Assembly (NCBI GenBank): GCA_965240325.2 | Contig: OZ251223.1 | Location: 3,472,001 to 3,536,000 of the forward strand | From: Rebecca billardiae RCC1528 | Taxonomy: Eukaryota > Protista > Haptophyta | DNA: 64,000 nucleotides | Direction: 5' to 3' | In this document: piece by piece, positions 47,434 to 64,000 of the stretch | Position numbering within the stretch: the first letter of the stretch is position 1 | Layout of the letters: each line of letters starts with the position of its first letter | The notes under the pieces: generated by a model | What the model was told of the DNA's origin: nothing | Seen by the model: only the letters and a program-made list of their open reading frames with translations | The model's database searches: none | Translations under genes and position numbers: made by a program

Positions 47434-47677
47434 CGCCGCGAAAGTCGAGAGTGGTGAGCACTGAGCAGATCGAGCCGCCGCGCCGAAAGAAAACCGGTTG
47501 ACATCAAGCTTACCACCGCACGGAAATCCGGCCGGCTCACCGCCGTGGGTCCGGATGGGCGGCCGAATCCGGCTGCTGGCGCCAAGTTTCCGGTGCAACG
47601 CTTTTTCCGCTGCCGTGCTGATTGCCGCGCAGCAGATCCAGGGTGGCGGAAGGCGCCGCCGCCGGCAGAATAGCATC

Positions 47678-49441
47678 ATGGCAGCCTCGCTCAATGGGGG
47701 CGCTGAGCACGTGGGGCACCCCACGCCGCTTCTCGACCACCTTGCGCCGACGACATTCCGTGCGAGCTGCCGTCGTATCGCATCGCTTCTGATCTCGACC
47801 TCAGTCGTCGTGCCCACCTTGTTCTGCTTTGTGTACTACCTGGTGATGCCGCTCGTGCGCCGCTTCAGCCGGCGCGCGGCGCACGAGATCCCGGGCGGGA
47901 TAGTGAACCCCGACATGACGCCCGTGGACTTCAAGCCGTACTTCCCCATCAACAATATCGGCGAGTGGATCCTGCTCGTGCTGCTCACGTGCGCGTGCTT
48001 CTTCAACTTCTTGGTCGCGGGGTCGACCTTTGTCATCTTCATGCGGCGCCGGATGCAGCAGTGCTGCGGGTTCCCGCCGCGGTACCGCGCGGCGTCCGGA
48101 GTCACCGAGGGCCTCCTCGAGACCGCCGTCTCCGTCGTCGTGCCATGCTACCTCCCCAACGAGCAGTACCTCATCAACGAGACGATCGACCACATCCTGC
48201 ACAAGCTTCGGCACGCGGGGCAGCTCAATCTCTACATCGTGTACAACTCGCCGACGGCGCTGCCGATCGAGGAGGAGCTGCGCGCGCGCGAGCTCACGCA
48301 GGCGGGCGTGCCCCCAGGCCGCACGCTCGTCGTGCGGCGCATCGAGGGCTCCACCTCGAAGGCAGAGAACCTGAACGCCATCTTTGAGGTGATTGAGGAC
48401 CGGATCACGGCCATCTACGACGCGGACCACCACCCCGACCCGCACTCGCTCGAGCTGCTGCTGCGCAAGCTGCAGAACCACCAGGTGGACTGCGTGCAGG
48501 GCTCGACGTACATCCGCAACACGTCATCCGGCCTCATGTCGCGCGTGATCGACGCCGAGTTCTTCGTGACGTACTTCATCTACTTCATGTCCCTGCAGTT
48601 CATCGCGCGCACGGCCTTCTTCGGAGGCTCCAACGCCGTCTGGCGGACGGCGGCGCTGCAGGGCGAGAAGTTCTCCACGTCGATGCAGACGGAGGACATC
48701 GACTTCGCGGCGCGCGCCATCCTCAAGGACAAGCGCATCCGCTTCTGCCCCGAGGCGCGCTCGGGCGAGCTCGCGCCGTCCAGCATGGGCGCGCTGTACA
48801 AGCAGAGGATGCGCTGGGCGATGGGGTGGGAGCAGGTGACGCTCGAGCACCTGTCGACCGTGCGTCGCTCGGGCATCCCGTGCTCGCGTAAGATGGGCGT
48901 GCTGTACATGCTGCCGATGCGCTGGCTGCTCGCCTTTCTGTCCGTCGTGGCGGCCATCGTGACGCCCATCCTCTGTCTCGTCTTCCCGCCCCAGATCTGG
49001 CCCCTCGCGCTCGACTTTCTGTTCACGCTCGGCTTCCTCGAGTCAACGCTGCTCGTCACGTGCACGCTGCTGGAGAGCATCTACCACGAGGCGTTCGTGC
49101 AGTGCATCTTCGTCGCGGCGTTCATGGTGTGCTCGCCACTCTATCTGGCCCTGCAGGTGCTGATGCTCCTGGCCTCCCTCTATCGCATCCGCACAGGCAG
49201 CACAGGCGGTTGGGTCGTCACGGCTCGCGCAGTGGCCGGGGCGGGCGGCGGCGGCGCGCAGCCGAATGCGCCCACGTCCGGTCAGGGCGCCAGCGGGTTG
49301 GGAGCTGCGGCGGGCGCGCTTGAGGCTGGTCGGGCTCCCGGGCAGCGGCCGCTGCTCTGGCATGGCTTCGAGCGCTTCTGTGGTCCAGACGACTACGGGA
49401 CGCAGCCACGTGGCCTGGGGCCGATGCGACACACGCTGTGA
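47678..49441 (+). CDS. Processive GT2 glycan synthase (cellulose-synthase-like superfamily), intronless
   Basis: VVVPCYLPNE, SKAENLN, IYDADH, TEDID, QRMRW (D,D,D,QxxRW), flanked by TM segments. Confidence 0.9.
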   Translation: MAASLNGGAEHVGHPTPLLDHLAPTTFRASCRRIASLLISTSVVVPTLFCFVYYLVMPLVRRFSRRAAHEIPGGIVNPDMTPVDFKPYFPINNIGEWILLVLLTCACFFNFLVAGSTFVIFMRRRMQQCCGFPPRYRAASGVTEGLLETAVSVVVPCYLPNEQYLINETIDHILHKLRHAGQLNLYIVYNSPTALPIEEELRARELTQAGVPPGRTLVVRRIEGSTSKAENLNAIFEVIEDRITAIYDADHHPDPHSLELLLRKLQNHQVDCVQGSTYIRNTSSGLMSRVIDAEFFVTYFIYFMSLQFIARTAFFGGSNAVWRTAALQGEKFSTSMQTEDIDFAARAILKDKRIRFCPEARSGELAPSSMGALYKQRMRWAMGWEQVTLEHLSTVRRSGIPCSRKMGVLYMLPMRWLLAFLSVVAAIVTPILCLVFPPQIWPLALDFLFTLGFLESTLLVTCTLLESIYHEAFVQCIFVAAFMVCSPLYLALQVLMLLASLYRIRTGSTGGWVVTARAVAGAGGGGAQPNAPTSGQGASGLGAAAGALEAGRAPGQRPLLWHGFERFCGPDDYGTQPRGLGPMRHTL

Positions 49442-50237: not shown

Positions 50238-50435
50238 GACTACTACAATCTATGCGACTACATCATGACATAAATTGATGTGATGACAATGTCCGCCCCG
50301 ACGGCGACATTATGATGAAGTCGACAACAGTATATCTTCAATCTATCTAGCGATATCTAGTTACATCATGCTGCATGCACATGCACTGACTGCTCATGTC
50401 TGACTGAACTCTTCTGTGCTGATGAACTCTGAAAC

Positions 50436-53400
50436 CTATAGGTGCAGGGCTGACCGTTGGCGAATCGCCTTGGCGAGCTTGGCCGAGCTCCCTGCTTGTA
50501 CATCATCATGGTTGTCTCCAAGCGTCTTCTTGTACGTCGCATCTGCCAGCCGCTGGTAAGTCCTGCCAGCAAATTGCTGCTGCTCGGTCGTATCGGCCAT
50601 CTGTTGCACGTGCCGCGCGCGGGAATGCAGAGCGGGCGCGCAGCCGTCGGTGAGTGGCTGCGCACAGACGGTATACGCGTGGCGCGACACGCGGGCGCGC
50701 AGGGCGCCTTGCGCACCCGACGCTCGAGAGCTCGCAGCGCGATGCGGACGAAGTCTTGCTGCCTGTTGTTGTCGACCCACTTCTTGACGGCCGGGTAGAA
50801 CGTGTCATAGAGGTACTCCTTACGCTCCTCGGTGGTCACGGAGAACTCGCGGATCTCGTCCCAAAGCTCAGGCATCTGCACGCGCGAGAGGGTGCGCGCG
50901 TTGGGAGGTGTCGCGAGTGAGCTGGCGCCGAGCACAAGGGCAGGTGCGTGGGAGGGCACTCTGAGGGGGGAAAGGGGGTGGGGGGCGCCGTGGGCGCGCA
51001 CCTCATCCGCGAGCGCGTTGCCCTTCTCGGCCTCGAGGGCGATCGCCTCCTCGACGGTGAGCGAGAACATGCGGATGGCGCTCTTCTGGTCCACCACCCA
51101 CTGCATCAGCTCGCGCGCCACCTGCAGCTGCGTGCGGTGCAGCCCGATCGCCAGCGCGTCCTCCTCCAGCCGCTGCTCCTCGAGGTGCGAGTCCGCCTTG
51201 CCGGGCGGCAGCTTGGCCCGCATGCCGCGCTTCGCGCCGTGGGACGAGAGCAGCGACGAGACGATCGGGTGGTCCGGCGACTCGTTGCTGATCGCGTCGT
51301 CCAACGGCGTGTTGCCGTGGTTGTCGGTGATGTTGATGTCGATGCGCGGCACCGAGAGGAGGTAGGTGACGGATGAGATGCGCACGCACGACGCGGCGAC
51401 GTGCAGCGCTGAGCGGCCGAGCGAGTCCTGCTCGTTCGGGGAGCAGCGGAAGCGGATGAGGCGCTGCAGCATGGCCACGTCGTCCGAGCACGCCGCGTCG
51501 CACAGGTTGTGCGCCACGTCGAAGTTGCCCAGCGTCGCGCCCTGCGCGAGCAGCATCTCGGCGCACGCGTCATTCTCCGAGAGCAGCGCATCCTGCAGCG
51601 GCGTGATGCCCCAGCGGTCGCGGATGTTCACGTGCCCGCCGTGCTCGAGCAGCATCGCGCAGTTCTCGGCCTTCCCCTGCGCCGCCGCCACGTGCAGCGA
51701 GGCGCGCCCGTCCGCGTCGCAGTGGTTCACGTCCGCGCCGAAGCGGCAGAGGAACTTGAGCTCGCTGTACCCCTCCGTCTTGGCAGCGGCGGAGCACAGC
51801 TTGTCGACGAGGTCCTTGGAGCCGAGGCGCGCGCCCGCCATCCACAGCAGCTCGGCCATGCCCTCCTGCTGGTGGCGCAGCGCGTCGTTGAGCGGCGTGC
51901 CGCCGCGCTCGTCCTCGACGTTCACGTCGCCCGACAGGCTGATCAGCAGCTTGACGATCTCCTTGTGCCCGCCGCACGCGGCGAGGTGCATGGCGCGGCG
52001 GCCGTCGTGGTCGCCCAGGTTGACGTCGATGCTGGTCGACGAGAGCACGCCGCGCACGGCGCTCAGGTCGCCCGCGGCCGCGGCGGTGCACAGGCGAGAG
52101 AGGTGCAGCTGGCGCCGGCGCTCGCGCGCCTCCTCGATCACCTGGCGCGCGCGAGGCGCGGGCGGTTGGGGGCGCCAGGTTCAGGCAGGGTGCGGCGGGA
52201 GGGCGGGAGCGCGGCGGGTCCAGCGCGAGCACACCACGGGCTGCACGCCGGGCGGTGGCGGCGCGCGGCGTGGCACGCGGGCGGCCGGGCGCGCTTTCCG
52301 CAGCTCAGCACGCAGCACGCAGCAACCCGCGCGGCGGCGCGCACCTGCGTGAGCTTGTCAGCCTCCTTCTGCTCCTCCTTCCCACCGAGTGCGTCGTCCT
52401 CGTCGTCCTCGAAGAAGTCGGCCTTCTCCTCCATCTCGACCATCCACTGCTCGTCGCCGGTCCCGCTCCGCTGGTCGTTGAGCGACGAGCGGCGCGACTT
52501 GGCCGTTCGGCCCGAGGTCTTCGAGTTCTTCGAGCCGGTCGACTTGCCCGACTTGCCGCCGTTCCCTGCGCCCGCGCAGAGGGCCGAGTCGCGCGGCGGC
52601 GACGCGCGCGGGCAGGCGAGGCTTGGTCAGTGGGAACGCAGCGCGGGGCGCGCGCTCGCAGGCTTGCGCGCGCTCGCAGGCTGGCGCGGGGCGCGACGCA
52701 GGCCGCGGGGCGCACCTTCGTACGCGCGCATCGCGCTGTCCATGATGATGTCCTCGTGGTCGGGGAACGTCTTGAGCAGCGCCTTGAAGCTGTCGCGCGA
52801 GAAGGCGAAGACGACCGTCTCGGGGCCGCTCATCGTGCGCGCGTTCTTGAAGTGGCGCAGGTTGAACGTGAACGCCATGCCGCCCACGGTCGCGCCCGCG
52901 TACCGCGAGTCCACCTCCGCCTCCGCGTCGTCGTCGCCGTCGCCGTCCAGCTCCTCGTACAGCTCGACGCCGCCCGACTTGATGATGATCAGCTCGTTGC
53001 ACGCCTCGCCGATGCGGAAGACCATCGCCTCGGAGTCGATCCGGCGCTCGCGCATCTTGGAGGCCATCAGGTCCTTGAACGCCTCCGAGCACGGCTGGAG
53101 CAGCACGCTGTCGCCCACCAGGTGGCGGTTGGTGTGCAGCGAGACGTCGAGCTGCAGCGCGGTCGGCAGCAGGTCGTACACCTGGTCCGACTGCATGCTC
53201 GACAGCGACGCGTCCTTGAGCCGGTTGCGGAAGAACGCCTCGATCTGCGCCTTGAGCTCGGGCGGCACGTTGATGTGCGCGACGTACGACTGCACAATCT
53301 CGAGCTGTGCGCGCTTGGCCACGATCTCGTCGTCCTGCTTCATCACGAGCGCCGAGATCTGGCCGACCGTCCACGCGTACACGGTCATGTTGATGATCAT

Positions 53401-56400
53401 CGCGCACACAAAGTAGGCGAGCTCCGCGTAGTTCGACGGCAGCTGCGGCATGCCCAGCGTGGTGAGCATCGTCAGCACGAACCACAGGCAGAGGCCGTAG
53501 TGCGAGGCGAGTGTCGAGTTCAGGCGCGCGTCCGGAGCCTCGACCGCCACCTCGTTCGCCTCGAGCAGCTCCCACCACGTCACCGCGGGCTCCGGCGAGC
53601 TCACGTACAGGTCGGGCTTGAACGAGCACAGGTTCCAAAAGCACGCGCAGATGTGCGCCGTGTACATGAGCACGCCCAGGTAGAGGACGAGCCCGGTGCG
53701 CAGGTCGTCGTTCGGCCGCGTCTTCAGCCAGCCGAGCACCGCCTGCCGCACGTACCGCAGGTTGATCATGCGGAAGCTGCGCAGCACGAACTGGAGCGCC
53801 GAGTTCGCGCCGAGCGCCAGCGCGAAGATGTTGTGCGGCCAGCACGTGAACAAGTCGAGCAGGCACTCGGTCGAGAGGTAGTGCTGAGCGATCTGCTTCG
53901 CGCTGTACACGACCGCGCCGGACTCGTTCACGTACGAGAGGCGGAAGCGAACGACGATGCGCAGCATGTAGAGCACGTCGAGCACGATGGGCACAATCAT
54001 GAGCGCGGGCACGTTCGACGCGCGCCCGGCGAAGCAGATCTGCAGCGGCACCATCCACGCGTCGTAGCTGCAGAAGAGCACAAACGCGCGGTGGAGCCAC
54101 TTGTACGCGCTCGAGTCGTGGCGGACGATCAAGGACGGGATGTCGCTGGCTGGCTGCGCTGCGGACGGGTTGAGCTGGTGGTAGGCGTTGGCCATGCCCA
54201 GGGCGGCCGAGATCTTCAGCCAAGTGCCGCGCCAGCCGCGAGAGTTGTCCTGCCCGCTCGCCACCGGGCCTGCTGCTTGCTCGAGCCACGCGCGCGATTC
54301 CAAGCCGTCCAGCACCTGAGACCACTTGGCAATGTCCGAGCCGCCGTCCTTGGCCTTGTTCTTCTCCTCCTCCTCGCGCAGCAAGGCGCGCGGGTCCGAA
54401 TCCACCGAGCCAGAGTCATCATCCGTGGGCTGCGTCGCGTCCTCCGACACGAGGAGCCCGAGGTTGTCCCTGAACCACTGGTCGAGCTGCGCCTCACCGA
54501 CCTCGCTTGGCAGCGCGATCGCGGACGTGATGAGCCGGTGCAGCGCCTTGTGCTCGACGGGCTCCGATGGCGACACACGACCAGCCGAGATATTCAGCCG
54601 GAGGCGGTCGACGATCGCTTCTGCCACACCCGGCGACGAGAGCAGCTGCGCGGTGGCGCGCGAGCTCTCCTCCTCCGAGAGGACCAGCTGCTCGGCCTGG
54701 CCCTTGCCGGACGTCATCCGCTTCCACTTGCTCGAGCCCTTCTCCGCCGGGATCACGGCGAGCTGCGTCGCGCTCAGCCTGTTGCTGGACTCTGCAGCTG
54801 CCTCGAGTGCGCTGGTGAGCACCCACGAGACGACGCCGACATAGAACTGCACCTCGGTCAGCACCCTGTTCGGCGGGGGCTTCGGAGCCGCGGCCTCGGA
54901 CATGCGCTGCATCATGGACTTCCTCGCATTGCTCGGAGTCTGCGGCTTGGACGTCCCGCTGCTGGACGACGATTTGCTGTCATCGGAGCAGCTGGACGAG
55001 CACGACGAGTCCTCCGAATCCGAGAGTTCAACGACATCGGCACCGCCGTCCGCCGAGCCGTTGTCAGCATCCTCATCGTCGGAGTCCAGCATGGCCGCTC
55101 GCTTCGGGACCATCGCAGTGGACTGCGGCATCGAGTCCAGAGAGGCGATCGTGGCAGGTGGGCCACGAGGAGCCTCGACGATGCGAGCGTCCGGCGGAAG
55201 CTGCGAGATCTCGGCCAGCATCTCCTCGTGGTGGTCGGCGAACCGCTCCTCGCCCTGCATGTCCGCCGCAGACGCCGGCATGACCGCGGTCGTCTGCAGC
55301 GCGCGCTCGAGCAGCTGGTCCTCAGGGCCAGTCTCCGCAGCCGTCACCTCCTTGCGGTGCCGCGGGCCGACGTTCTGCCGCGTCGCCACCTCCACCTCCG
55401 CCGGAAGCAGCTGCAGCAGCAGAGACAACTTGTGCAGGCGCTGCTTCAGGTCAAGGCCGCCGTCCACCTCGAACTGCACGCCAAAGCACAGGCGGTACAC
55501 GCCGTTCGAGTCGTGCACCGGTCGCATCGACAGCAGGTTCTGGAACGTCTGCCCGTTCTTGCGGTAGTTGGTGATCTTGACGAAGCAGTCCGCGCCGCGC
55601 CGCAGCGTGTCCTGGATGATCGCCACGGACGCCGGCTCCGTGCGAGGGCCCTGCAAGAAGCGGCAGTTACGACCCTGCGCCTCGCGCTTCGAGTAGCCCG
55701 TCACGCGCCCAAACTCCTTGTTCGTGAACAACATCGGGTTGCCCGAGATCGCCATGTCCGACAGCACGATGCACGCGGGGAAGTCCTCGGCGAACGACGC
55801 GAACGAGTAGATGAAGCCCGCAAGGTCGTCCGGCACCTCGTACTTGTCCCAGATCAGCCCGCGGCTCGAGTCGATGCGGTCGATCGGCGGAACCATCGAC
55901 TCGACGAGCGAGTCGCAACCGCCAGACTTGATCCACTTCGGGAACAGCTCGCCCGTCAGCTTCGACGTCACCTCCGCCGCCTTCTTCTCGAACGAGGCGA
56001 AGTCGAGCGACCGAGCCGTGCCCGAGGACATGCCCAGGTGCTTCTCGCAGATCTGACGCATGCGCACGTCGCGCGCACGCCCGTCCATCTTCGACAGCTT
56101 CTTCGCCTCGCTGAAGAAGTCGACGAGCGAGCCCTCGTTCGTGCGCTGCAAGAACTGGCGGAACGACGCCTGCGCCTGCTCGTTCGTCATCAGCTTCTCG
56201 AGCGACTGCTCGGCGTCGAGCGTCCACTGCAGCTTGGCGAACATCACCTGCGCCTTGCGGTGCTGCTGCGCCTTCGACTGCGAGTCCACGCGCACCTCCT
56301 TCGACGCGAACGCAGCAGGCTGAGCGGCGGCCGGCATCGTGCGCGGCAGCAGCTGACGCAGCTGCGCCAGCGCAGAGCGCTCGCCCTCCGACTGCTGCTC

Positions 56401-58712
56401 GGCCCACGAGAGCACGCCCAGCGAGTACCGGTACTCGCCGTTCGTGTCGCGCACGGGCGTGAGCGACAGGTCGTTCGTGAAGCGCGAGCCGTCCTTGCGG
56501 TAGTTCGTCACCTGCACGTGCAGCTCAGTCATCTTGCGCAGCGCGCGCACCATCTTGGACACAATCTTGGGCTCGGTCGACGCGCCCTGCAAGAAGCGGC
56601 AGTTCCGGCCCTCAACCTCGGACTTCGGGTAGCCCGTCACGCGAGCGAAGCCGCCGTTGCAGTACATCACCGTCACGCCCGGCACCGTCATGTCCGTGAT
56701 CGCCACCGCGATCGGCAGCGGCTCCACAGCAGCCTTGAGCGCGCCCAGCCACGTGCCGTCGCCCACGGACGGCACCTGCCCTGACGACAGCGCCTGCAGC
56801 AGCTGCACGCTCGAGTGGGGAAGACTGAAATCGCCGCCGCCGCCCATGCCCATGCCCATCGGCTGCGACATCGGCTGCGCCATCGGCTGCGACATCGGCT
56901 GCGACATCGGCTGCGCCATCGGCTGCGCCATCGGCTGCGGCTGCGCGTACGACGGCTGAGGCGCGCCGTACCCGCCGCCCATGCCGTTCATCCCGCCGCC
57001 GCCCATCCCGCCGCCGCCCATCATCGGCGGAGGCGCCATCGGCGTCGAGCCGAATGGCACCGGCGGCTCCGGCGGGGCAGCAGCGCCAGAGATCTCGGCC
57101 AGCATCTCCTCGTGGTGGTCGGCGAACCGCTCCTCGCCCTGCATGTCCGCCGCAGACGCCGGCATGACCGCGGTCGTCTGCAGCGCGCGCTCGAGCAGCT
57201 GGTCCTCAGGGCCAGTCTCCGCAGCCGTCACCTCCTTGCGGTGCCGCGGGCCGACGTTCTGCCGCGTCGCCACCTCCACCTCCGCCGGAAGCAGCTGCAG
57301 CAGCAGAGACAACTTGTGCAGGCGCTGCTTCAGGTCAAGGCCGCCGTCCACCTCGAACTGCACGCCAAAGCACAGGCGGTACACGCCGTTCGAGTCGTGC
57401 ACCGGTCGCATCGACAGCAGGTTCTGGAACGTCTGCCCGTTCTTGCGGTAGTTGGTGATCTTGACGAAGCAGTCCGCGCCGCGCCGCAGCGTGTCCTGGA
57501 TGATCGCCACGGACGCCGGCTCCGTGCGAGGGCCCTGCAAGAAGCGGCAGTTGCGACCCTGCGCCTCGCGCTTCGAGTAGCCCGTCACGCGCCCAAACTC
57601 CTTGTTCGTGAACAACATCGGGTTGCCCGAGATCGCCATGTCCGACAGCACGATGCACGCGGGGAAGTCCTCGGCGAACGACGCGAACGAGTAGATGAAG
57701 CCCGCAAGGTCGTCCGGCACCTCGTACTTGTCCCAGATCAGCCCGCGGCTCGAGTCGATGCGGTCGATCGGCGGAACCATCGACTCGACGAGCGAGTCGC
57801 AACCGCCAGACTTGATCCACTTCGGGAACAGCTCGCCCGTCAGCTTCGACGTCACCTCCGCCGCCTTCTTCTCGAACGAGGCGAAGTCGAGCGACCGAGC
57901 CGTGCCCGAGGACATGCCCAGGTGCTTCTCGCAGATCTGACGCATGCGCACGTCGCGCGCACGCCCGTCCATCTTCGACAGCTTCTTCGCCTCGCTGAAG
58001 AAGTCGACGAGCGAGCCCTCGTTCGTGCGCTGCAAGAACTGGCGGAACGACGCCTGCGCCTGCTCGTTCGTCATCAGCTTCTCGAGCGACTGCTCGGCGT
58101 CAAGCGTCCACTGCAGCTTGGTGAACATCACCTGCGCCTTGCGGTGCTGCTGCGCCTTCGACTGCGAGTCCACGCGCACCTCCTTCGACGCGAACGCAGC
58201 AGGCTGAGCGGCGGCCGGCATCGTGCGCGGCAGCAGCTGACGCAGCTGCGCCAGCGCAGAGCGCTCGCCCTCCGACTGCTGCTCGGCCCACGAGAGCACG
58301 CCCAGCGAGTACCGGTACTCGCCGTTCGTGTCGCGCACGGGCGTGAGCGACAGGTCGTTCGTGAAGCGCGAGCCGTCCTTGCGGTAGTTCGTCACCTGCA
58401 CGTGCAGCTCCTTCATCTTGCGCAGCGCGCGCACCATCTTGGACACAATCTTGGGCTCGGTCGACGCGCCCTGCAAGAAGCGGCAGTTCCGGCCCTCCAC
58501 CTCGTACTTCGGGTAGCCCGTCACGCGAGCGAAGCCGCCGTTGCAGTACATCACCGTCACGCCCGGCACCGTCATGTCCGTGATCGCCACCGCGATCGGC
58601 AGCGGCTCCACAGCAGCCTTGAGCGCGCCCAGCCACGTGCCGTCGCCCACGGACGGCACCTGCCCGGACGACAGCGCCTGCAGCAGCTGCACGCTCGAGT
58701 CGGGCAGGCTGA

Positions 58713-58743
<31 letters not shown>

Positions 58744-60611
58744 CATGCCCATGCCCATCGGCTGCGACATCGGCTGCGCCATCGGCTGCGCCATCGGCTG
58801 CGCCATCGGCTGCGCCATCGGCTGCGACATCGGCTGCGGCTGCGCGTACGACGGCTGAGGCGCGCCGTACCCGCCGCCCATGCCGTTCATCCCGCCGCCG
58901 CCCATCCCGCCGCCGCCCATCATCGGCGGAGGCGCCATCGACGTCGAGCCGAATGGCACCGGCGGCTCCGGCGGGGCAGCAGCGCCAGAGATCTCGGCCA
59001 GCATCTCCTCGTGGTGGTCGGCGAACCGCTCCTCGCCCTGCATGTCCGCCGCAGACGCCGGCATGACCGCGGTCGTCTGCAGCGCGCGCTCGAGCAGCTG
59101 GTCCTCAGGGCCAGTCTCCGCAGCCGTCACCTCCTTGCGGTGCCGCGGGCCGACGTTCTGCCGCGTCGCCACCTCCACCTCCGCCGGAAGCAGCTGCAGC
59201 AGCAGAGACAACTTGTGCAGGCGCTGCTTCAGGTCAAGGCCGCCGTCCACCTCGAACTGCACGCCAAAGCACAGGCGGTACACGCCGTTCGAGTCGTGCA
59301 CCGGTCGCATCGACAGCAGGTTCTGGAACGTCTGCCCGTTCTTGCGGTAGTTGGTGATCTTGACGAAGCAGTCCGCGCCGCGCCGCAGCGTGTCCTGGAT
59401 GATCGCCACAGACGCCGGCTCCGTGCGAGGGCCCTGCAAGAAGCGGCAGTTACGACCCTGCGCCTCGCGCTTCGAGTAGCCCGTCACGCGCCCAAACTCC
59501 TTGTTCGTGAACAACATCGGGTTGCCCGAGATCGCCATGTCCGACAGCACGATGCACGCGGGGAAGTCCTCGGCGAACGACGCGAACGAGTAGATGAAGC
59601 CCGCAAGGTCGTCCGGCACCTCGTACTTGTCCCAGATCAGCCCGCGGCTCGAGTCGATGCGGTCGATCGGCGGAACCATCGACTCGACGAGCGAGTCGCA
59701 ACCGCCAGACTTGATCCACTTCGGGAACAGCTCGCCCGTCAGCTTCGACGTCACCTCCGCCGCCTTCTTCTCGAACGAGGCGAAGTCGAGCGACCGAGCC
59801 GTGCCCGAGGACATGCCCAGGTGCTTCTCGCAGATCTGACGCATGCGCACGTCGCGCGCACGCCCGTCCATCTTCGACAGCTTCTTCGCCTCGCTGAAGA
59901 AGTCGACGAGCGAGCCCTCGTTCGTGCGCTGCAAGAACTGGCGGAACGACGCCTGCGCCTGCTCGTTCGTCATCAGCTTCTCGAGCGACTGCTCGGCGTC
60001 AAGCGTCCACTGCAGCTTGGTGAACATCACCTGCGCCTTGCGGTGCTGCTGCGCCTTCGACTGCGAGTCCACGCGCACCTCCTTCGACGCGAACGCAGCA
60101 GGCTGAGCGGCGGCCGGCAGCGTGCGCGGCAGCAGCTGACGCAGCTGCGCCAGCGCAGAGCGCTCGCCCTCCGACTGCTGCTCGGCCCACGAGAGCACGC
60201 CCAGCGAGTACCGGTACTCGCCGTTCGTGTCGCGCACGGGCGTGAGCGACAGATCGTTCGTGAAGCGCGAGCCGTCCTTGCGGTAGTTCGTCACCTGCAC
60301 GTGCAGCTCCTTCATCTTGCGCAGCGCGCGCACCATCTTGGACACAATCTTGGGCTCGGTCGACGCGCCCTGCAAGAAGCGGCAGTTCCGGCCCTCCACC
60401 TCGTACTTCGGGTAGCCCGTCACGCGAGCGAAGCCGCCGTTGCAGTACATCACCGTCACGCCCGGCACCGTCATGTCCGTGATCGCCACCGCGATCGGCA
60501 GCGGCTCCACAGCAGCCTTGAGCGCGCCCAGCCACGTGCCGTCGCCCACGGACGGCACCTGCCCGGACGACAGCGCCTGCAGCAGCTGCACGCTCGAGTC
60601 GGGCAGGCTGA

Positions 60612-60642
<31 letters not shown>

Positions 60643-62510
60643 CATGCCCATGCCCATCGGCTGCGACATCGGCTGCGCCATCGGCTGCGACATCGGCTGC
60701 GCCATCGGCTGCGCCATCGGCTGCGACATCGGCTGCGGCTGCGCGTACGACGGCTGAGGCGCGCCGTACCCGCCGCCCATGCCGTTCATCCCGCCGCCGC
60801 CCATCCCGCCGCCGCCCATCATCGGCGGAGGCGCCATCGACGTCGAGCCGAATGGCTCCGGCGGCTCCGGCGGGGCGGCAGCGCCAGAGATCTCGGCCAG
60901 CATCTCCTCGTGGTGGTCGGCGAACCGCTCCTCGCCCTGCATGTCCGCCGCAGACGCCGGCATGACCGCGGTCGTCTGCAGCGCGCGCTCGAGCAGCTGG
61001 TCCTCAGGGCCAGTCTCCGCAGCCGTCACCTCCTTGCGGTGCCGCGGGCCGACGTTCTGCCGCGTCGCCACCTCCACCTCCGCCGGAAGCAGCTGCAGCA
61101 GCAGAGACAACTTGTGCAGGCGCTGCTTCAGGTCAAGGCCGCCGTCCACCTCGAACTGCACGCCAAAGCACAGGCGGTACACGCCGTTCGAGTCGTGCAC
61201 CGGTCGCATCGACAGCAGGTTCTGGAACGTCTGCCCGTTCTTGCGGTAGTTGGTGATCTTGACGAAGCAGTCCGCGCCGCGCCGCAGCGTGTCCTGGATG
61301 ATCGCCACAGACGCCGGCTCCGTGCGAGGGCCCTGCAAGAAGCGGCAGTTACGACCCTGCGCCTCGCGCTTCGAGTAGCCCGTCACGCGCCCAAACTCCT
61401 TGTTCGTGAACAACATCGGGTTGCCCGAGATCGCCATGTCCGACAGCACGATGCACGCGGGGAAGTCCTCGGCGAACGACGCGAACGAGTAGATGAAGCC
61501 CGCAAGGTCGTCCGGAACCTCGTACTTGTCCCAGATCAGCCCGCGGCTCGAGTCGATGCGGTCGATCGGCGGAACCATCGACTCGACGAGCGAGTCGCAA
61601 CCGCCAGACTTGATCCACTTCGGGAACAGCTCGCCCGTCAGCTTCGACGTCACCTCCGCCGCCTTCTTCTCGAACGAGGCGAAGTCGAGCGACCGAGCCG
61701 TGCCCGAGGACATGCCCAGGTGCTTCTCGCAGATCTGACGCATGCGCACGTCGCGCGCACGCCCGTCCATCTTCGACAGCTTCTTCGCCTCGCTGAAGAA
61801 GTCGACGAGCGAGCCCTCGTTCGTGCGCTGCAAGAACTGGCGGAACGACGCCTGCGCCTGCTCGTTCGTCATCAGCTTCTCGAGCGACTGCTCGGCGTCA
61901 AGCGTCCACTGCAGCTTGGTGAACATCACCTGCGCCTTGCGGTGCTGCTGCGCCTTCGACTGCGAGTCCACGCGCACCTCCTTCGACGCGAACGCAGCAG
62001 GCTGAGCGGCGGCCGGCAGCGTGCGCGGCAGCAGCTGACGCAGCTGCGCCAGCGCAGAGCGCTCGCCCTCCGACTGCTGCTCGGCCCACGAGAGCACGCC
62101 CAGCGAGTACCGGTACTCGCCGTTCGTGTCGCGCACGGGCGTGAGCGACAGATCGTTCGTGAAGCGCGAGCCGTCCTTGCGGTAGTTCGTCACCTGCACG
62201 TGCAGCTCCTTCATCTTGCGCAGCGCGCGCACCATCTTGGACACAATCTTGGGCTCGGTCGACGCGCCCTGCAAGAAGCGGCAGTTCCGGCCCTCCACCT
62301 CGTACTTCGGGTAGCCCGTCACGCGAGCGAAGCCGCCGTTGCAGTACATCACCGTCACGCCCGGCACCGTCATGTCCGTGATCGCCACCGCGATCGGCAG
62401 CGGCTCCACAGCAGCCTTGAGCGCGCCCAGCCACGTGCCGTCGCCCACGGACGGCACCTGCCCGGACGACAGCGCCTGCAGCAGCTGCACGCTCGAGTCG
62501 GGCAGGCTGA

Positions 62511-62541
<31 letters not shown>

Positions 62542-64000
62542 CATGCCCATGCCCATCGGCTGCGACATCGGCTGCGCCATCGGCTGCGACATCGGCTGCG
62601 CCATCGGCTGCGCCATCGGCTGCGCCATCGGCTGCGGCTGCGCGTACGACGGCTGAGGCGCGCCGTACCCGCCGCCCATGCCGTTCATCCCGCCGCCGCC
62701 CATCCCGCCGCCGCCCATCATCGGCGGAGGCGCCATCGGCGTCGAGCCGAATGGCACCGGCGGCTCCGGCGGGGCAGCAGCGCCAGAGATCTCGGCCAGC
62801 ATCTCCTCGTGGTGGTCGGCGAACCGCTCCTCGCCCTGCATGTCCGCCGCAGACGCCGGCATGACCGCGGTCGTCTGCAGCGCGCGCTCGAGCAGCTGGT
62901 CCTCAGGGCCAGTCTCCGCAGCCGTCACCTCCTTGCGGTGCCGCGGGCCGACGTTCTGCCGCGTCGCCACCTCCACCTCCGCCGGAAGCAGCTGCAGCAG
63001 CAGAGACAACTTGTGCAGGCGCTGCTTCAGGTCAAGGCCGCCGTCCACCTCGAACTGCACGCCAAAGCACAGGCGGTACACGCCGTTCGAGTCGTGCACC
63101 GGTCGCATCGACAGCAGGTTCTGGAACGTCTGCCCGTTCTTGCGGTAGTTGGTGATCTTGACGAAGCAGTCCGCGCCGCGCCGCAGCGTGTCCTGGATGA
63201 TCGCCACAGACGCCGGCTCCGTGCGAGGGCCCTGCAAGAAGCGGCAGTTACGACCCTGCGCCTCGCGCTTCGAGTAGCCCGTCACGCGCCCAAACTCCTT
63301 GTTCGTGAACAACATCGGGTTGCCCGAGATCGCCATGTCCGACAGCACGATGCACGCGGGGAAGTCCTCGGCGAACGACGCGAACGAGTAGATGAAGCCC
63401 GCAAGGTCGTCCGGAACCTCGTACTTGTCCCAGATCAGCCCGCGGCTCGAGTCGATGCGGTCGATCGGCGGAACCATCGACTCGACGAGCGAGTCGCAAC
63501 CGCCAGACTTGATCCACTTCGGGAACAGCTCGCCCGTCAGCTTCGACGTCACCTCCGCCGCCTTCTTCTCGAACGAGGCGAAGTCGAGCGACCGAGCCGT
63601 GCCCGAGGACATGCCCAGGTGCTTCTCGCAGATCTGACGCATGCGCACGTCGCGCGCACGCCCGTCCATCTTCGACAGCTTCTTCGCCTCGCTGAAGAAG
63701 TCGACGAGCGAGCCCTCGTTCGTGCGCTGCAAGAACTGGCGGAACGACGCCTGCGCCTGCTCGTTCGTCATCAGCTTCTCGAGCGACTGCTCGGCGTCGA
63801 GCGTCCACTGCAGCTTGGTGAACATCACCTGCGCCTTGCGGTGCTGCTGCGCCTTCGACTGCGAGTCCACGCGCACCTCCTTCGACGCGAACGCAGCAGG
63901 CTGAGCGGCGGCCGGCATCGTGCGCGGCAGCAGCTGACGCAGCTGCGCCAGCGCAGAGCGCTCGCCCTCCGACTGCTGCTCGGCCCACGAGAGCACGCCC
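50436..64000 (-). CDS. Giant (LOV-RGS-LOV)n - 6TM cation channel - C-linker/CNBD-like - ankyrin-repeat protein, 5'-partial; exons >64000..52716, 52565..52345, 52141..51002, 50875..50717, 50600..50436
   Basis: The 3789-aa ORF carries 9 GRNCRFLQG LOV motifs, 5 RGS-like domains, S1-S6, pore TTLGMP and a CNBD. GT-AG introns 52715..52566 and 52344..52142 join it in frame to the ankyrin ORF (LCTAAAAGDL, GRRAMHLAA, GRASLHVAA, GRSALHVAA, GNTPLDDA). The last two exons are less certain. Confidence 0.88.
51235..52105 (-). other. Ankyrin-repeat region (three similar blocks) of the giant gene
   Basis: Repeated LCxAA..., DxxGRxxxHxAAxxG and G(G/I/N)TPLxDA motifs, as in plant Shaker-type channel and glutaminase ankyrin tails. 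Confidence 0.92.
53345..54110 (-). other. Ion-transport domain S1-S6 of the giant gene
   Basis: YDAWMVPLQICF, LDVLYMLRIVVRFRLSY, IAQHYL...LLDLFTCWP, S4-like LRSFRMINLRYVR, AHICACFW, pore helix LWFVLTMLTTLG, S6 AWTVGQISALV. Confidence 0.92.
55205..64000 (-). repeat. Coding tandem array of 1899-bp (633-aa) units, about 4.6 copies visible; the last unit is 15 bp shorter
   Basis: Identical antisense ORFs recur at 55811, 57695, 59594, 61493 and 63392 (spacings 1884, 1899, 1899, 1899). Confidence 0.97.

What the first reader, a model, noticed from the sequence alone, without database searches (positions are those of the whole stretch)
53440..53475. Pore filter reads TTLGMP, not TTVGYGD: predicted non-K+-selective, CNG-like pore
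Seen: LTMLTTLGMPQLPSN. Established: K+ selectivity needs TxGYG, whereas animal CNG channels use the shorter TTIGETP-type filter and pass Na+ and Ca2+. Inference: despite the AKT-like ankyrin tail, the channel would be depolarising and possibly Ca2+-permeable, though it lacks the CNG filter glutamate. That would suit a flagellar light response.
Basis: partly seen in the sequence, partly recalled or inferred. Interest (0 to 1): 0.72.

Follow-up and report, generated by a model that had tools for sequence, protein, structure and literature searches.

The report
Non-GYG pore loop, doubled algal channel
The odd pore motif TTLGMPQ is real and conserved: it marks the second of two ion-channel units joined in one giant algal protein, and it probably makes the channel poorly selective for potassium, though no current has been measured.

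Summary
Observation confirmed. LTMLTTLGMPQLPSN is encoded on the minus strand at 53431-53475, between a predicted pore helix and S6 of a 6TM + CNBD + ankyrin channel unit.

It is neither a sequencing error nor decay. All 42 paralogues in this genome and every outside relative of the clade lack GYG. They share [TS][TA]-L-G-h-s-Q-[LV]-P-x-N..E.

The pore-helix-to-S6 span has the length of animal CNGA1-3. It is one residue shorter than KCNH, AKT1, GORK, KAT1, HCN1 and SthK. The CNG glutamate is absent; a glutamine three residues later is conserved.

Repeat I lies about 12 kb beyond the window's end, partly in the same 8009-codon open frame, and reads TSMGYA. The LOV/RGS array sits between the repeats. 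All 42 repeat-II copies have a repeat I upstream.

Best reading: a TPC-like pseudo-tetramer with alternating GYA and GMPQ loops, so weak or no K+ selectivity. Ca2+ permeability is unsupported.

It is a new variant of the tandem CNBD channels described in 2020. An earlier scan note on another piece of this genome (s1-350577) reports the same doubled architecture.

The parts
53431..53463 (-). Filter loop TTLGMPQLPSN of repeat II (residues 263-273 of window:52630-54249:-)
   Evidence: Translation. Coil between the pore helix and S6 in the AF2 model. Motif conserved in 39 paralogues.
53464..53535 (-). Pore helix of repeat II
   Evidence: AF2 helix 200-223 of the model, which is residues 239-262.
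53275..53430 (-). S6 and the start of the C-linker (YAWTVGQISALVMKQDDEIVAKRAQLE), the most conserved stretch of the family
   Evidence: Invariant columns in alignments A1 and A2. AF2 helix 235-286.
53347..54105 (-). Six-transmembrane Ion_trans domain of repeat II. S4 at 53719-53802 keeps only R157, R160 and R165, with Asn at the third periodic position.
   Evidence: Pfam PF00520, E 1.9e-13. Helix map and S4 column counts.
52768..53046 (-). Cyclic-nucleotide-binding domain of repeat II. This copy has Gly where 20 of 29 relatives have the phosphate-binding-cassette Glu.
   Evidence: Pfam PF00027, E 1.4e-07. PBC column counts.
52142..52715 (-). Probable intron between the channel exon and the ankyrin exon. 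A GT follows the codons for AYEG at 52714-52715. The acceptor was not mapped.
   Evidence: Stop at 52627-52629, homologue consensus ending QYEG, and sequence read. Inference only, no RNA evidence.
50369..52141 (-). Ankyrin-repeat tail of repeat II (separate open frame)
   Evidence: Pfam Ank_2, E 1e-39. Homologues P0007, P0013 and P0017 carry ANK after the CNBD.
55200..64000 (-). LOV (PAS_9) / RGS-like repeat array in the same open frame. It continues beyond the window to repeat I at G000:C3:3548162-3549825(-), about 12 kb past the window's end, whose filter reads GFTSMGYASIIL.
   Evidence: Nine GRNCRFLQG motifs. Pfam PAS_9 and RGS. Repeat I found; its tail shares the 8009-codon open frame with repeat II.

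Best explanation
TTLGMPQLPSN is the pore loop of repeat II of a two-repeat tandem channel. Each repeat is 6TM, C-linker, CNBD and ankyrin. In this gene a LOV/RGS array sits between the repeats. Repeat II loops form an old clade-wide class, [TS][TA]-L-G-hydrophobic-small-Q-[LV]-P-x-N..E. They have no aromatic residue and almost never a second glycine, and they have the length of animal CNG loops. Repeat I loops have K-channel length and read T[AS][ML]GY[G/A]; here the loop reads GYA. Inferred mechanism: two chains pair so that repeat I and repeat II loops alternate around one pore, as in TPC and K2P channels. Only two of the four strands could then offer a GYG-type carbonyl ladder, and here only GYA. 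The four-fold outer K+ sites therefore cannot form. The TTLG half could still make the inner sites, as in NaK and CNG pores. The expected result is a cation channel with weak or no K+/Na+ discrimination whose outer mouth is lined by neutral Gln. Shown: sequence, conservation, loop length, tandem architecture, clade structure. Inferred: 2+2 assembly, conduction and selectivity.
For: Motif and domains. PDB relatives and loop alignment. The span equals CNGA1/2/3 in length and is one residue shorter than KCNH2/5, AKT1, GORK, KAT1, HCN1, SthK, LliK and CNGC15b. All 42 repeat-II copies in the genome lack GYG, while a canonical STVGYGD channel exists at G000:C32. Every one of the 42 has a repeat I upstream on the same strand: about 5 kb away in 39 genes, 22-38 kb in the 3 LOV-array genes. 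Repeat I filters. Outside relatives: one search found 1408 hits at E<=1e-30, and the core clade is non-GYG throughout. P0013 is an MMETSP transcript that carries both repeats. The tree gives a repeat II superclade of 51 rows (support 99) with 0/51 G[YF]G, and a separate repeat I superclade of 36 rows (support 100). The S6/C-linker is nearly invariant, which argues for a working gate. A 2+2 pore-domain complex prediction scored 0.36 against a best control of 0.00, rated weak support, with runs agreeing in at least 81% of contacts and partner pLDDT at least 60. Tandem CNBD channels have precedent in PMC7576140.
Against: No electrophysiology exists for any member. Selectivity cannot be read reliably from sequence: HCN keeps GYG yet is only weakly selective (PMC7576140). 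The 2+2 assembly is inferred from obligate co-linearity alone, and each repeat could instead tetramerise with its own kind. The complex prediction is only weak support and may reflect memory of known tetrameric pores. The two filter positions equivalent to Y and G vary among paralogues, which also fits a relaxed, non-conducting loop. No reads or RNA cover the motif.
Confidence: 0.55

Rival explanations
1. One reading: repeat II units form their own homotetrameric, CNG-like, non-selective pore that also passes Ca2+ and depolarises the cell on opening.
For: Loop length equals CNGA1-3. The TTxG start and a Pro match the last Pro of the CNG loop. In this gene about 22 kb of linker separates the repeats, so like-with-like assembly is sterically possible.
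Against: The CNG Glu position is hydrophobic in 39/39 copies, and neither repeat has an acidic ring. Repeat II never occurs without repeat I in this genome, 42/42. Sequence is closer to KCNH and plant Shaker than to CNGA.
Confidence: 0.15
2. The repeat II pore is non-conducting. The unit serves as a regulatory or scaffolding pseudo-subunit, or ions or protons pass through the voltage-sensor domain as in HCNL1.
For: HCNL1 lost CIGYG and conducts protons through its voltage-sensing domain (PMC7306766). The Y and G positions are variable here. S4 has only three conserved basic residues, with Asn at the third periodic position.
Against: In HCNL1 the pore string is not conserved between species. 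Here the flanks L-G and Q-[LV]-P-x-N-x-x-E are almost invariant across 39 paralogues and outside relatives. S6 and the C-linker are the best-conserved part of the protein. There is no Met-type gap in S4 as in HCNL1.
Confidence: 0.15
3. The channel is still K+-selective. Repeat I's GY(G/A) strands together with the TTLG inner half of repeat II are enough.
For: Repeat I keeps GYG in most paralogues. K2P channels tolerate non-identical P-loops. PMC7576140 judges tandem channels to be at least K+-permeable.
Against: In this gene repeat I reads GYA. Repeat II lacks both the aromatic residue and the second Gly and is one residue shorter. K2P loops all keep G-x-G (my own knowledge, not tested here).
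Confidence: 0.13
4. The motif is a sequencing or assembly error, or the gene is a decaying pseudogene copy.
For: No public reads cover the site. The neighbouring LOV array is highly repetitive.
Against: The open frame is intact for 8009 codons. GMPQ or GLPQ also occurs in paralogues L010, L016 and L023. Transcript-derived relatives have loops of the same length and type.
Confidence: 0.02

Closest known systems
[quoted passage not shown] 2020, PMC7576140)
   Same: Two 6TM-CNBD repeats lie on one chain. First and second repeats form separate clades. Identity between the repeats is low, about 22% here (paper read).
   Different: Those channels have TVGYG-like filters in both repeats and were not reported from haptophytes. 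Here repeat II is non-GYG across its whole clade, each repeat has an ankyrin tail, and three genes carry a LOV/RGS array between the repeats.
Animal CNG channels (CNGA1-3, filter TIGE-TPPP; CNGB3)
   Same: The pore-helix-to-S6 span has the same length, with no net indel. TTxG start, a Pro-containing loop and no GYG. C-linker and CNBD present.
   Different: No filter Glu; a conserved Gln lies three residues after the Gly. Sequence is closer to KCNH and plant Shaker. Ankyrin tail and tandem architecture are absent from CNG channels.
Plant Shaker-type channels AKT1 / GORK / SKOR
   Same: 6TM + C-linker + CNBD + ankyrin order. Top Foldseek matches, E 2.6e-21 to 1e-20, and phmmer 1e-14 to 1e-18.
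   Different: They carry TxGYGD, have a loop one residue longer and are single-repeat subunits.
Two-pore channels (TPC) and K2P channels
   Same: Two non-identical pore-forming repeats per chain. A dimer makes a pseudo-tetrameric pore with alternating loops. This is the proposed way of working, from my own knowledge of these families.
   Different: No sequence relationship was tested. TPCs lack CNBDs and K2P channels lack voltage-sensor domains. Assembly here is only inferred.
HCNL1 proton channel (PMC7306766)
   Same: A CNBD-family channel that has lost the GYG motif.
   Different: The HCNL1 pore string is unconserved and non-conducting. Here the loop flanks are strongly conserved.

Membership tests
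CNBD-channel superfamily (KCNH/HCN/CNG/plant Shaker) | Six-transmembrane Ion_trans core followed by a C-linker and a cyclic-nucleotide-binding domain | tested here: met
   Pfam PF00520 and PF00027. phmmer to KCNH5 at 4e-22. Foldseek to GORK, AKT1, HCN1 and CNGA1.
K+-selective P-loop channels | T-x-G-[YF]-G signature in the pore loop | tested here: not met
   The loop reads TTLGMPQ. 0/39 paralogues have an aromatic residue at the Y position and 4/39 have the second Gly. 0/51 rows of the repeat II superclade have G[YF]G.
Animal CNG channels | Short pore loop, one residue shorter than in K+ channels | tested here: met
   The aligned span has equal length to CNGA1/2/3 and is one residue shorter than KCNH, AKT1, GORK, KAT1, HCN1 and SthK. 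CNGB3 aligns without an indel.
Animal CNG channels | Filter glutamate directly after the Gly (TIGE) | tested here: not met
   The position is M/L/V/I/A/T in 39/39 copies. TIGE is the clade signature according to PMC7576140.
Animal CNG channels | Closest sequence relationship to CNGA/CNGB | tested here: not met
   KCNH scores 1e-22 and AKT1 1e-18, against CNGA at 1e-13.
Two-repeat tandem CNBD channels (PMC7576140) | Two 6TM-CNBD repeats on one polypeptide | tested here: met
   The tail of repeat I and all of repeat II lie in one 8009-codon open frame. 42/42 genes are tandem. The MMETSP transcript P0013 holds both repeats.
Two-repeat tandem CNBD channels (PMC7576140) | First and second repeats form separate clades | tested here: met
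   FastTree: repeat II superclade support 99, repeat I superclade support 100.
Two-repeat tandem CNBD channels (PMC7576140) | TVGYG-type filter in both repeats | tested here: not met
   Repeat II reads TTLGMPQ and repeat I reads TSMGYA in this gene.
Plant Shaker (AKT1-like) | Ankyrin repeats after the CNBD | tested here: met
   Ank_2, E 1e-39, in window:50369-52141:-.
Plant Shaker (AKT1-like) | TxGYGD filter | tested here: not met
   The loop reads TTLGMPQ, with no GYGD.
HCNL1-like voltage-sensor proton channels | Pore motif lost and not conserved; a Met interrupts the S4 arginines | tested here: not met
   The loop flanks are conserved. S4 has Asn, not Met, at the third periodic position. Conduction through the voltage sensor cannot be tested with these tools.

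The most novel reading that the evidence does not exclude
The LG-x-x-Q-LP loop paired with a GY(G/A) loop defines a new, naturally heteromeric selectivity filter. Its ion preference would fall outside the K+, HCN and CNG patterns, for example Na+-preferring through a neutral Gln ring as TPC2 is through Asn. In this gene that filter would be gated by blue light through the LOV array placed between the two repeats.
Probability: 0.2. Interest if true: 0.85.

Novelty: new variant of a known kind. Interest (0 to 1): 0.62.

Why it matters
A 2020 survey of eukaryotic CNBD channels (PMC7576140) states that strong departures from TVGY/FG are rare and belong to single channels, with the animal CNG clade as the only clade-level exception. 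The repeat II clade here is a second exception. It is large and old: 42 genes in this genome, plus Diacronema lutheri, MMETSP transcripts, environmental contigs and a wider superclade that includes Rhodelphis. It always occurs covalently paired with a GYG-type repeat. That makes it a natural test of how many canonical strands a pore needs for K+ selectivity. It also matters for judging the LOV-array genes as candidate light-regulated channels, because their ionic effect, depolarising or hyperpolarising, depends on this pore.

Tried and rejected
Public reads: the one sequencing-run search found only a 0.12 share in run X1. Laying X1-X3 on window:50300-55100 gave four contigs of 151-212 bases, none over 53431-53475, so it neither confirms nor refutes the motif.

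Word-based protein searches, single sequence and profile, found only 6 and 10 relatives. The exhaustive profile search was needed.

Complex prediction of a 2+2 pore-domain assembly: score 0.36 against a best control of 0.00, rated weak support. At 0.60 or under, the mark was reached by only 5 of 78 solved complexes and by all 4 mismatches that passed. I do not count it as evidence of assembly.

Literature searches for a natural LOV-channel fusion or a haptophyte tandem channel found nothing direct. A search for plant CNGC filter structures gave nothing usable.

Sequencing error, pseudogene and 'degenerate single copy' were considered and rejected (see rivals).

Membership in animal CNG channels was rejected on the missing Glu and on sequence distance.

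The channel exon and the ankyrin exon were searched separately by reference. The organism could not be named: the nearest named relatives are Pavlovophyceae, but no paralogue loop matches Diacronema lutheri or Pavlovales sp. CCMP2436 sequences.

Full report
OBSERVATION. The minus strand of window 53431-53475 encodes LTMLTTLGMPQLPSN. It lies in an ORF that runs from 52627 to the window's end. In the whole assembly that ORF is an open frame of 8009 codons (G000:C3). In window:52630-54249:- Pfam finds Ion_trans (residues 49-301, E 1.9e-13) and cNMP_binding (402-494, E 1.4e-07). It finds ankyrin repeats in the next open frame downstream, 50369-52141(-). It finds PAS_9 (LOV-type) and RGS domains upstream. 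An AlphaFold2 model built on 29 family sequences has mean pLDDT 85.3. It places the motif in the coil between a pore helix (residues 239-262) and S6.

WHAT THE CHANNEL UNIT RESEMBLES. The best solved relatives by sequence are KCNH5, KCNH2 and KCNH1 (about 1e-22). Then come AKT1, KAT1, SKOR and GORK (1e-14 to 1e-18), and then CNGA, SthK and HCN (1e-10 to 1e-13). Foldseek ranks GORK, AKT1, HCN1 and CNGA1 together at E about 1e-19 to 1e-21. This is the CNBD-channel superfamily, without a clear home in any animal or plant family.

HMMER aligns TTLG-MPQ-L-(gap)-P with KCNH TTIG-FGN-I-A-P. A search with only the pore helix to S6 shows that the aligned span has exactly the length of CNGA1, CNGA2 and CNGA3. 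It is one residue shorter than in KCNH2, KCNH5, AKT1, GORK, KAT1, HCN1, SthK, LliK and plant CNGC15b. A fish CNGB3 (P0012) also aligns to the family profile without an indel, whereas GYGD channels need a one-residue insertion. It does not hold for chemistry: the position of the CNG glutamate is hydrophobic here.

NOT AN ERROR, NOT A DEGENERATE COPY. A six-frame search of the organism's own 72-Mb genome found 42 copies of this channel unit. I fetched all of them. None has GYG. In the 39 copies that align without gaps, the counts are as follows.
- Position 263 is T or S, and position 264 is T or A in most copies.
- L265 is present in 38/39 and G266 in 39/39.
- Position 267 is always aliphatic or small (L, V, M, I, A or T).
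- Position 268 is small (A, T, V, P, S); it is Gly in only 4/39.
- Q269 is present in 35/39, and position 270 is L or V in 35/39.
- P271 is present in 39/39, N273 in 34/39 and E276 in 38/38.

GMPQ or GLPQ also occurs in three other paralogues. The same genome holds a canonical STVGYGD channel at C32:598831-600003, so the organism has ordinary K+ channels as well.

Outside this genome, an exhaustive profile search found 1408 proteins at E<=1e-30. Every member of the core clade is non-GYG, with loops such as LGLNQLP, LGIAQVP, LGMESMP and LGLAQLP. Named members come from Diacronema lutheri, Pavlovales sp. CCMP2436 and MMETSP transcriptomes.

THE MISSED CONTEXT: A TWO-REPEAT CHANNEL. Many paralogues showed a second, weaker channel match about 5 kb upstream in the same open frame. 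Searching with that upstream unit showed that every one of the 42 repeat-II copies has such a repeat I upstream on the same strand. The distance is about 5 kb in 39 genes and 22-38 kb in three genes: this one and two on contig C8. This tally is my own reading.

For this gene, repeat I lies at G000:C3:3548162-3549825(-), about 12 kb beyond the window's end. Its CNBD tail is in the same 8009-codon open frame as repeat II. The gene therefore reads: repeat I (6TM, CNBD, ankyrin), then the LOV/RGS array, then repeat II (6TM, CNBD), an intron, and ankyrin.

Repeat I loops read T[AS][ML]GYG in most paralogues, GYA in six including this gene (GFTSMGYASIIL), and GYT or GYV in two. They have K-channel length. 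Neither pore loop of this protein carries a canonical TxGYG. An MMETSP transcript (P0013, 2647 aa) carries both repeats, with TALGYGK and TTLGMESMPAN. In a relative, then, the doubled form exists as mRNA.

PHYLOGENY. A tree of 148 repeat units was built with FastTree, so its support values should be taken cautiously. It gives a repeat II superclade of 51 rows (support 99) in which no row has G[YF]G. It gives a separate repeat I superclade of 36 rows (support 100). Both stand apart from four-repeat CNGK-like proteins, which carry GYGD in their repeats. The superclades include the two repeats of a Diacronema lutheri protein (P0029) and of a Rhodelphis marinus protein (P0023). The doubling and the loss of GYG in repeat II therefore predate these lineages. 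The window's repeat II groups (support 100) with the two other LOV-array paralogues and with two environmental proteins. One of those, P0017, carries PAS_9 x4, RGS, Ion_trans, CNBD and ANK.

LITERATURE. Two-repeat tandem CNBD channels were first described from sequence in 2020, in dinoflagellates and oomycetes. Their filters are TVGYG-like. That paper states that strong deviations are rare and individual, with the animal CNG TIGE clade as the only exception (PMC7576140). Haptophyte tandem channels, or a clade-wide non-GYG repeat, did not turn up in my searches. LOV-RGS 'helmchrome-like' transcripts of Pavlovophyceae have been reported without a channel part (PMC8017926). HCNL1 shows that a CNBD-family channel without GYG can have a dead pore and conduct protons through its voltage sensor (PMC7306766).

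MECHANISM (inference). Obligate covalent pairing in 42 of 42 genes, and in distant relatives, suggests that the two repeats contribute to one pore. Two chains would give a pseudo-tetramer with alternating loops, as in TPC and K2P channels. A 2+2 pore-domain complex prediction gave only weak support: 0.36 against a best control of 0.00, with runs agreeing in at least 81% of contacts and partner pLDDT at least 60. It may simply recall known tetramers.

With only two GYG-type strands, and GYA in this gene, the four-fold outer K+ sites cannot form. The other two strands are CNG-length loops lacking the aromatic residue and the second glycine. The conserved T-T-L-G half could still build the inner sites, as in NaK and CNG pores (my own knowledge). 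I therefore expect a cation channel with weak or no K+/Na+ discrimination.

Neither loop has an acidic ring.

The near-invariant S6 and C-linker argue that the gate works. S4 keeps three basic residues, with Asn at the third periodic position. In this copy the phosphate-binding cassette has Gly where most relatives have Glu. Voltage and nucleotide control are therefore uncertain.

LIMITS. No current has been measured for any member. No reads or RNA cover the motif. The intron between the CNBD exon and the ankyrin exon is inferred from a GT after the AYEG codons and from homologues.

VERDICT. It is a new variant of the tandem CNBD channels. Interest 0.62.

Noticed in passing
G000, 42 loci (L001-L042 for repeat II; L044-L086 for repeat I): This 72-Mb genome carries at least 42 paralogues of the two-repeat CNBD-ankyrin channel, mostly in open frames of 2000-3400 codons. 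That is an unusually large expansion of one channel type.
   Followed up: partly
G000:C8:1555240-1596511 and G000:C8:1488125-1525981: Two further genes have repeat I and repeat II 35-38 kb apart, in open frames of 13615 and 12933 codons. Their repeat II units are the nearest relatives of the window's. They are presumably even longer LOV-array versions. I did not scan the stretch between their repeats.
   Followed up: partly
L059, L060, L062-L064, L066, L073, L076, L077, L086 (repeat I loci): In several paralogues an intron splits repeat I exactly inside or beside its filter, between GMT/GLS and AMGYG, or just after GYG.
   Followed up: no
G000:C32:598831-600003 (L043): A single-repeat channel with canonical STVGYGDITP lies in the same genome, only 23% identical to the window's unit.
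   Followed up: partly
P0017 (JGI metagenome protein, 2567 aa): An environmental protein carries four PAS_9 (LOV-type) domains, RGS, Ion_trans, CNBD and ankyrin. Its loop reads STLGLAQLPSH and it is sister to the window's repeat II. The LOV-array channel therefore exists in at least one other organism.
   Followed up: partly
P0030, P0031, P0044, P0056, P0134, P0152 (representative library): Multi-repeat CNBD channels (four repeats detected in P0030, P0031 and P0152) in which one repeat (the third where all four are seen) reads TLVVVVIGD while the others keep G[YF]GD. This is another conserved non-canonical loop in a multi-repeat channel.
   Followed up: no
window 52874-52882 (residues 456-458 of the channel unit): The phosphate-binding cassette reads G-G-M where 20 of 29 relatives have G-E. 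The Arg of the cassette (R471) is kept. Nucleotide binding may be weakened in this copy.
   Followed up: partly
window 53719-53802: S4 of repeat II keeps only R157, R160 and R165, with a conserved Asn (20/29) at the third periodic position. It looks like a weakly charged voltage sensor.
   Followed up: partly
window 47498-49441 (+): A 647-aa ORF on the plus strand ends about 0.9 kb beyond the low-coordinate (3') end of the ankyrin-tail frame. I did not examine it.
   Followed up: no
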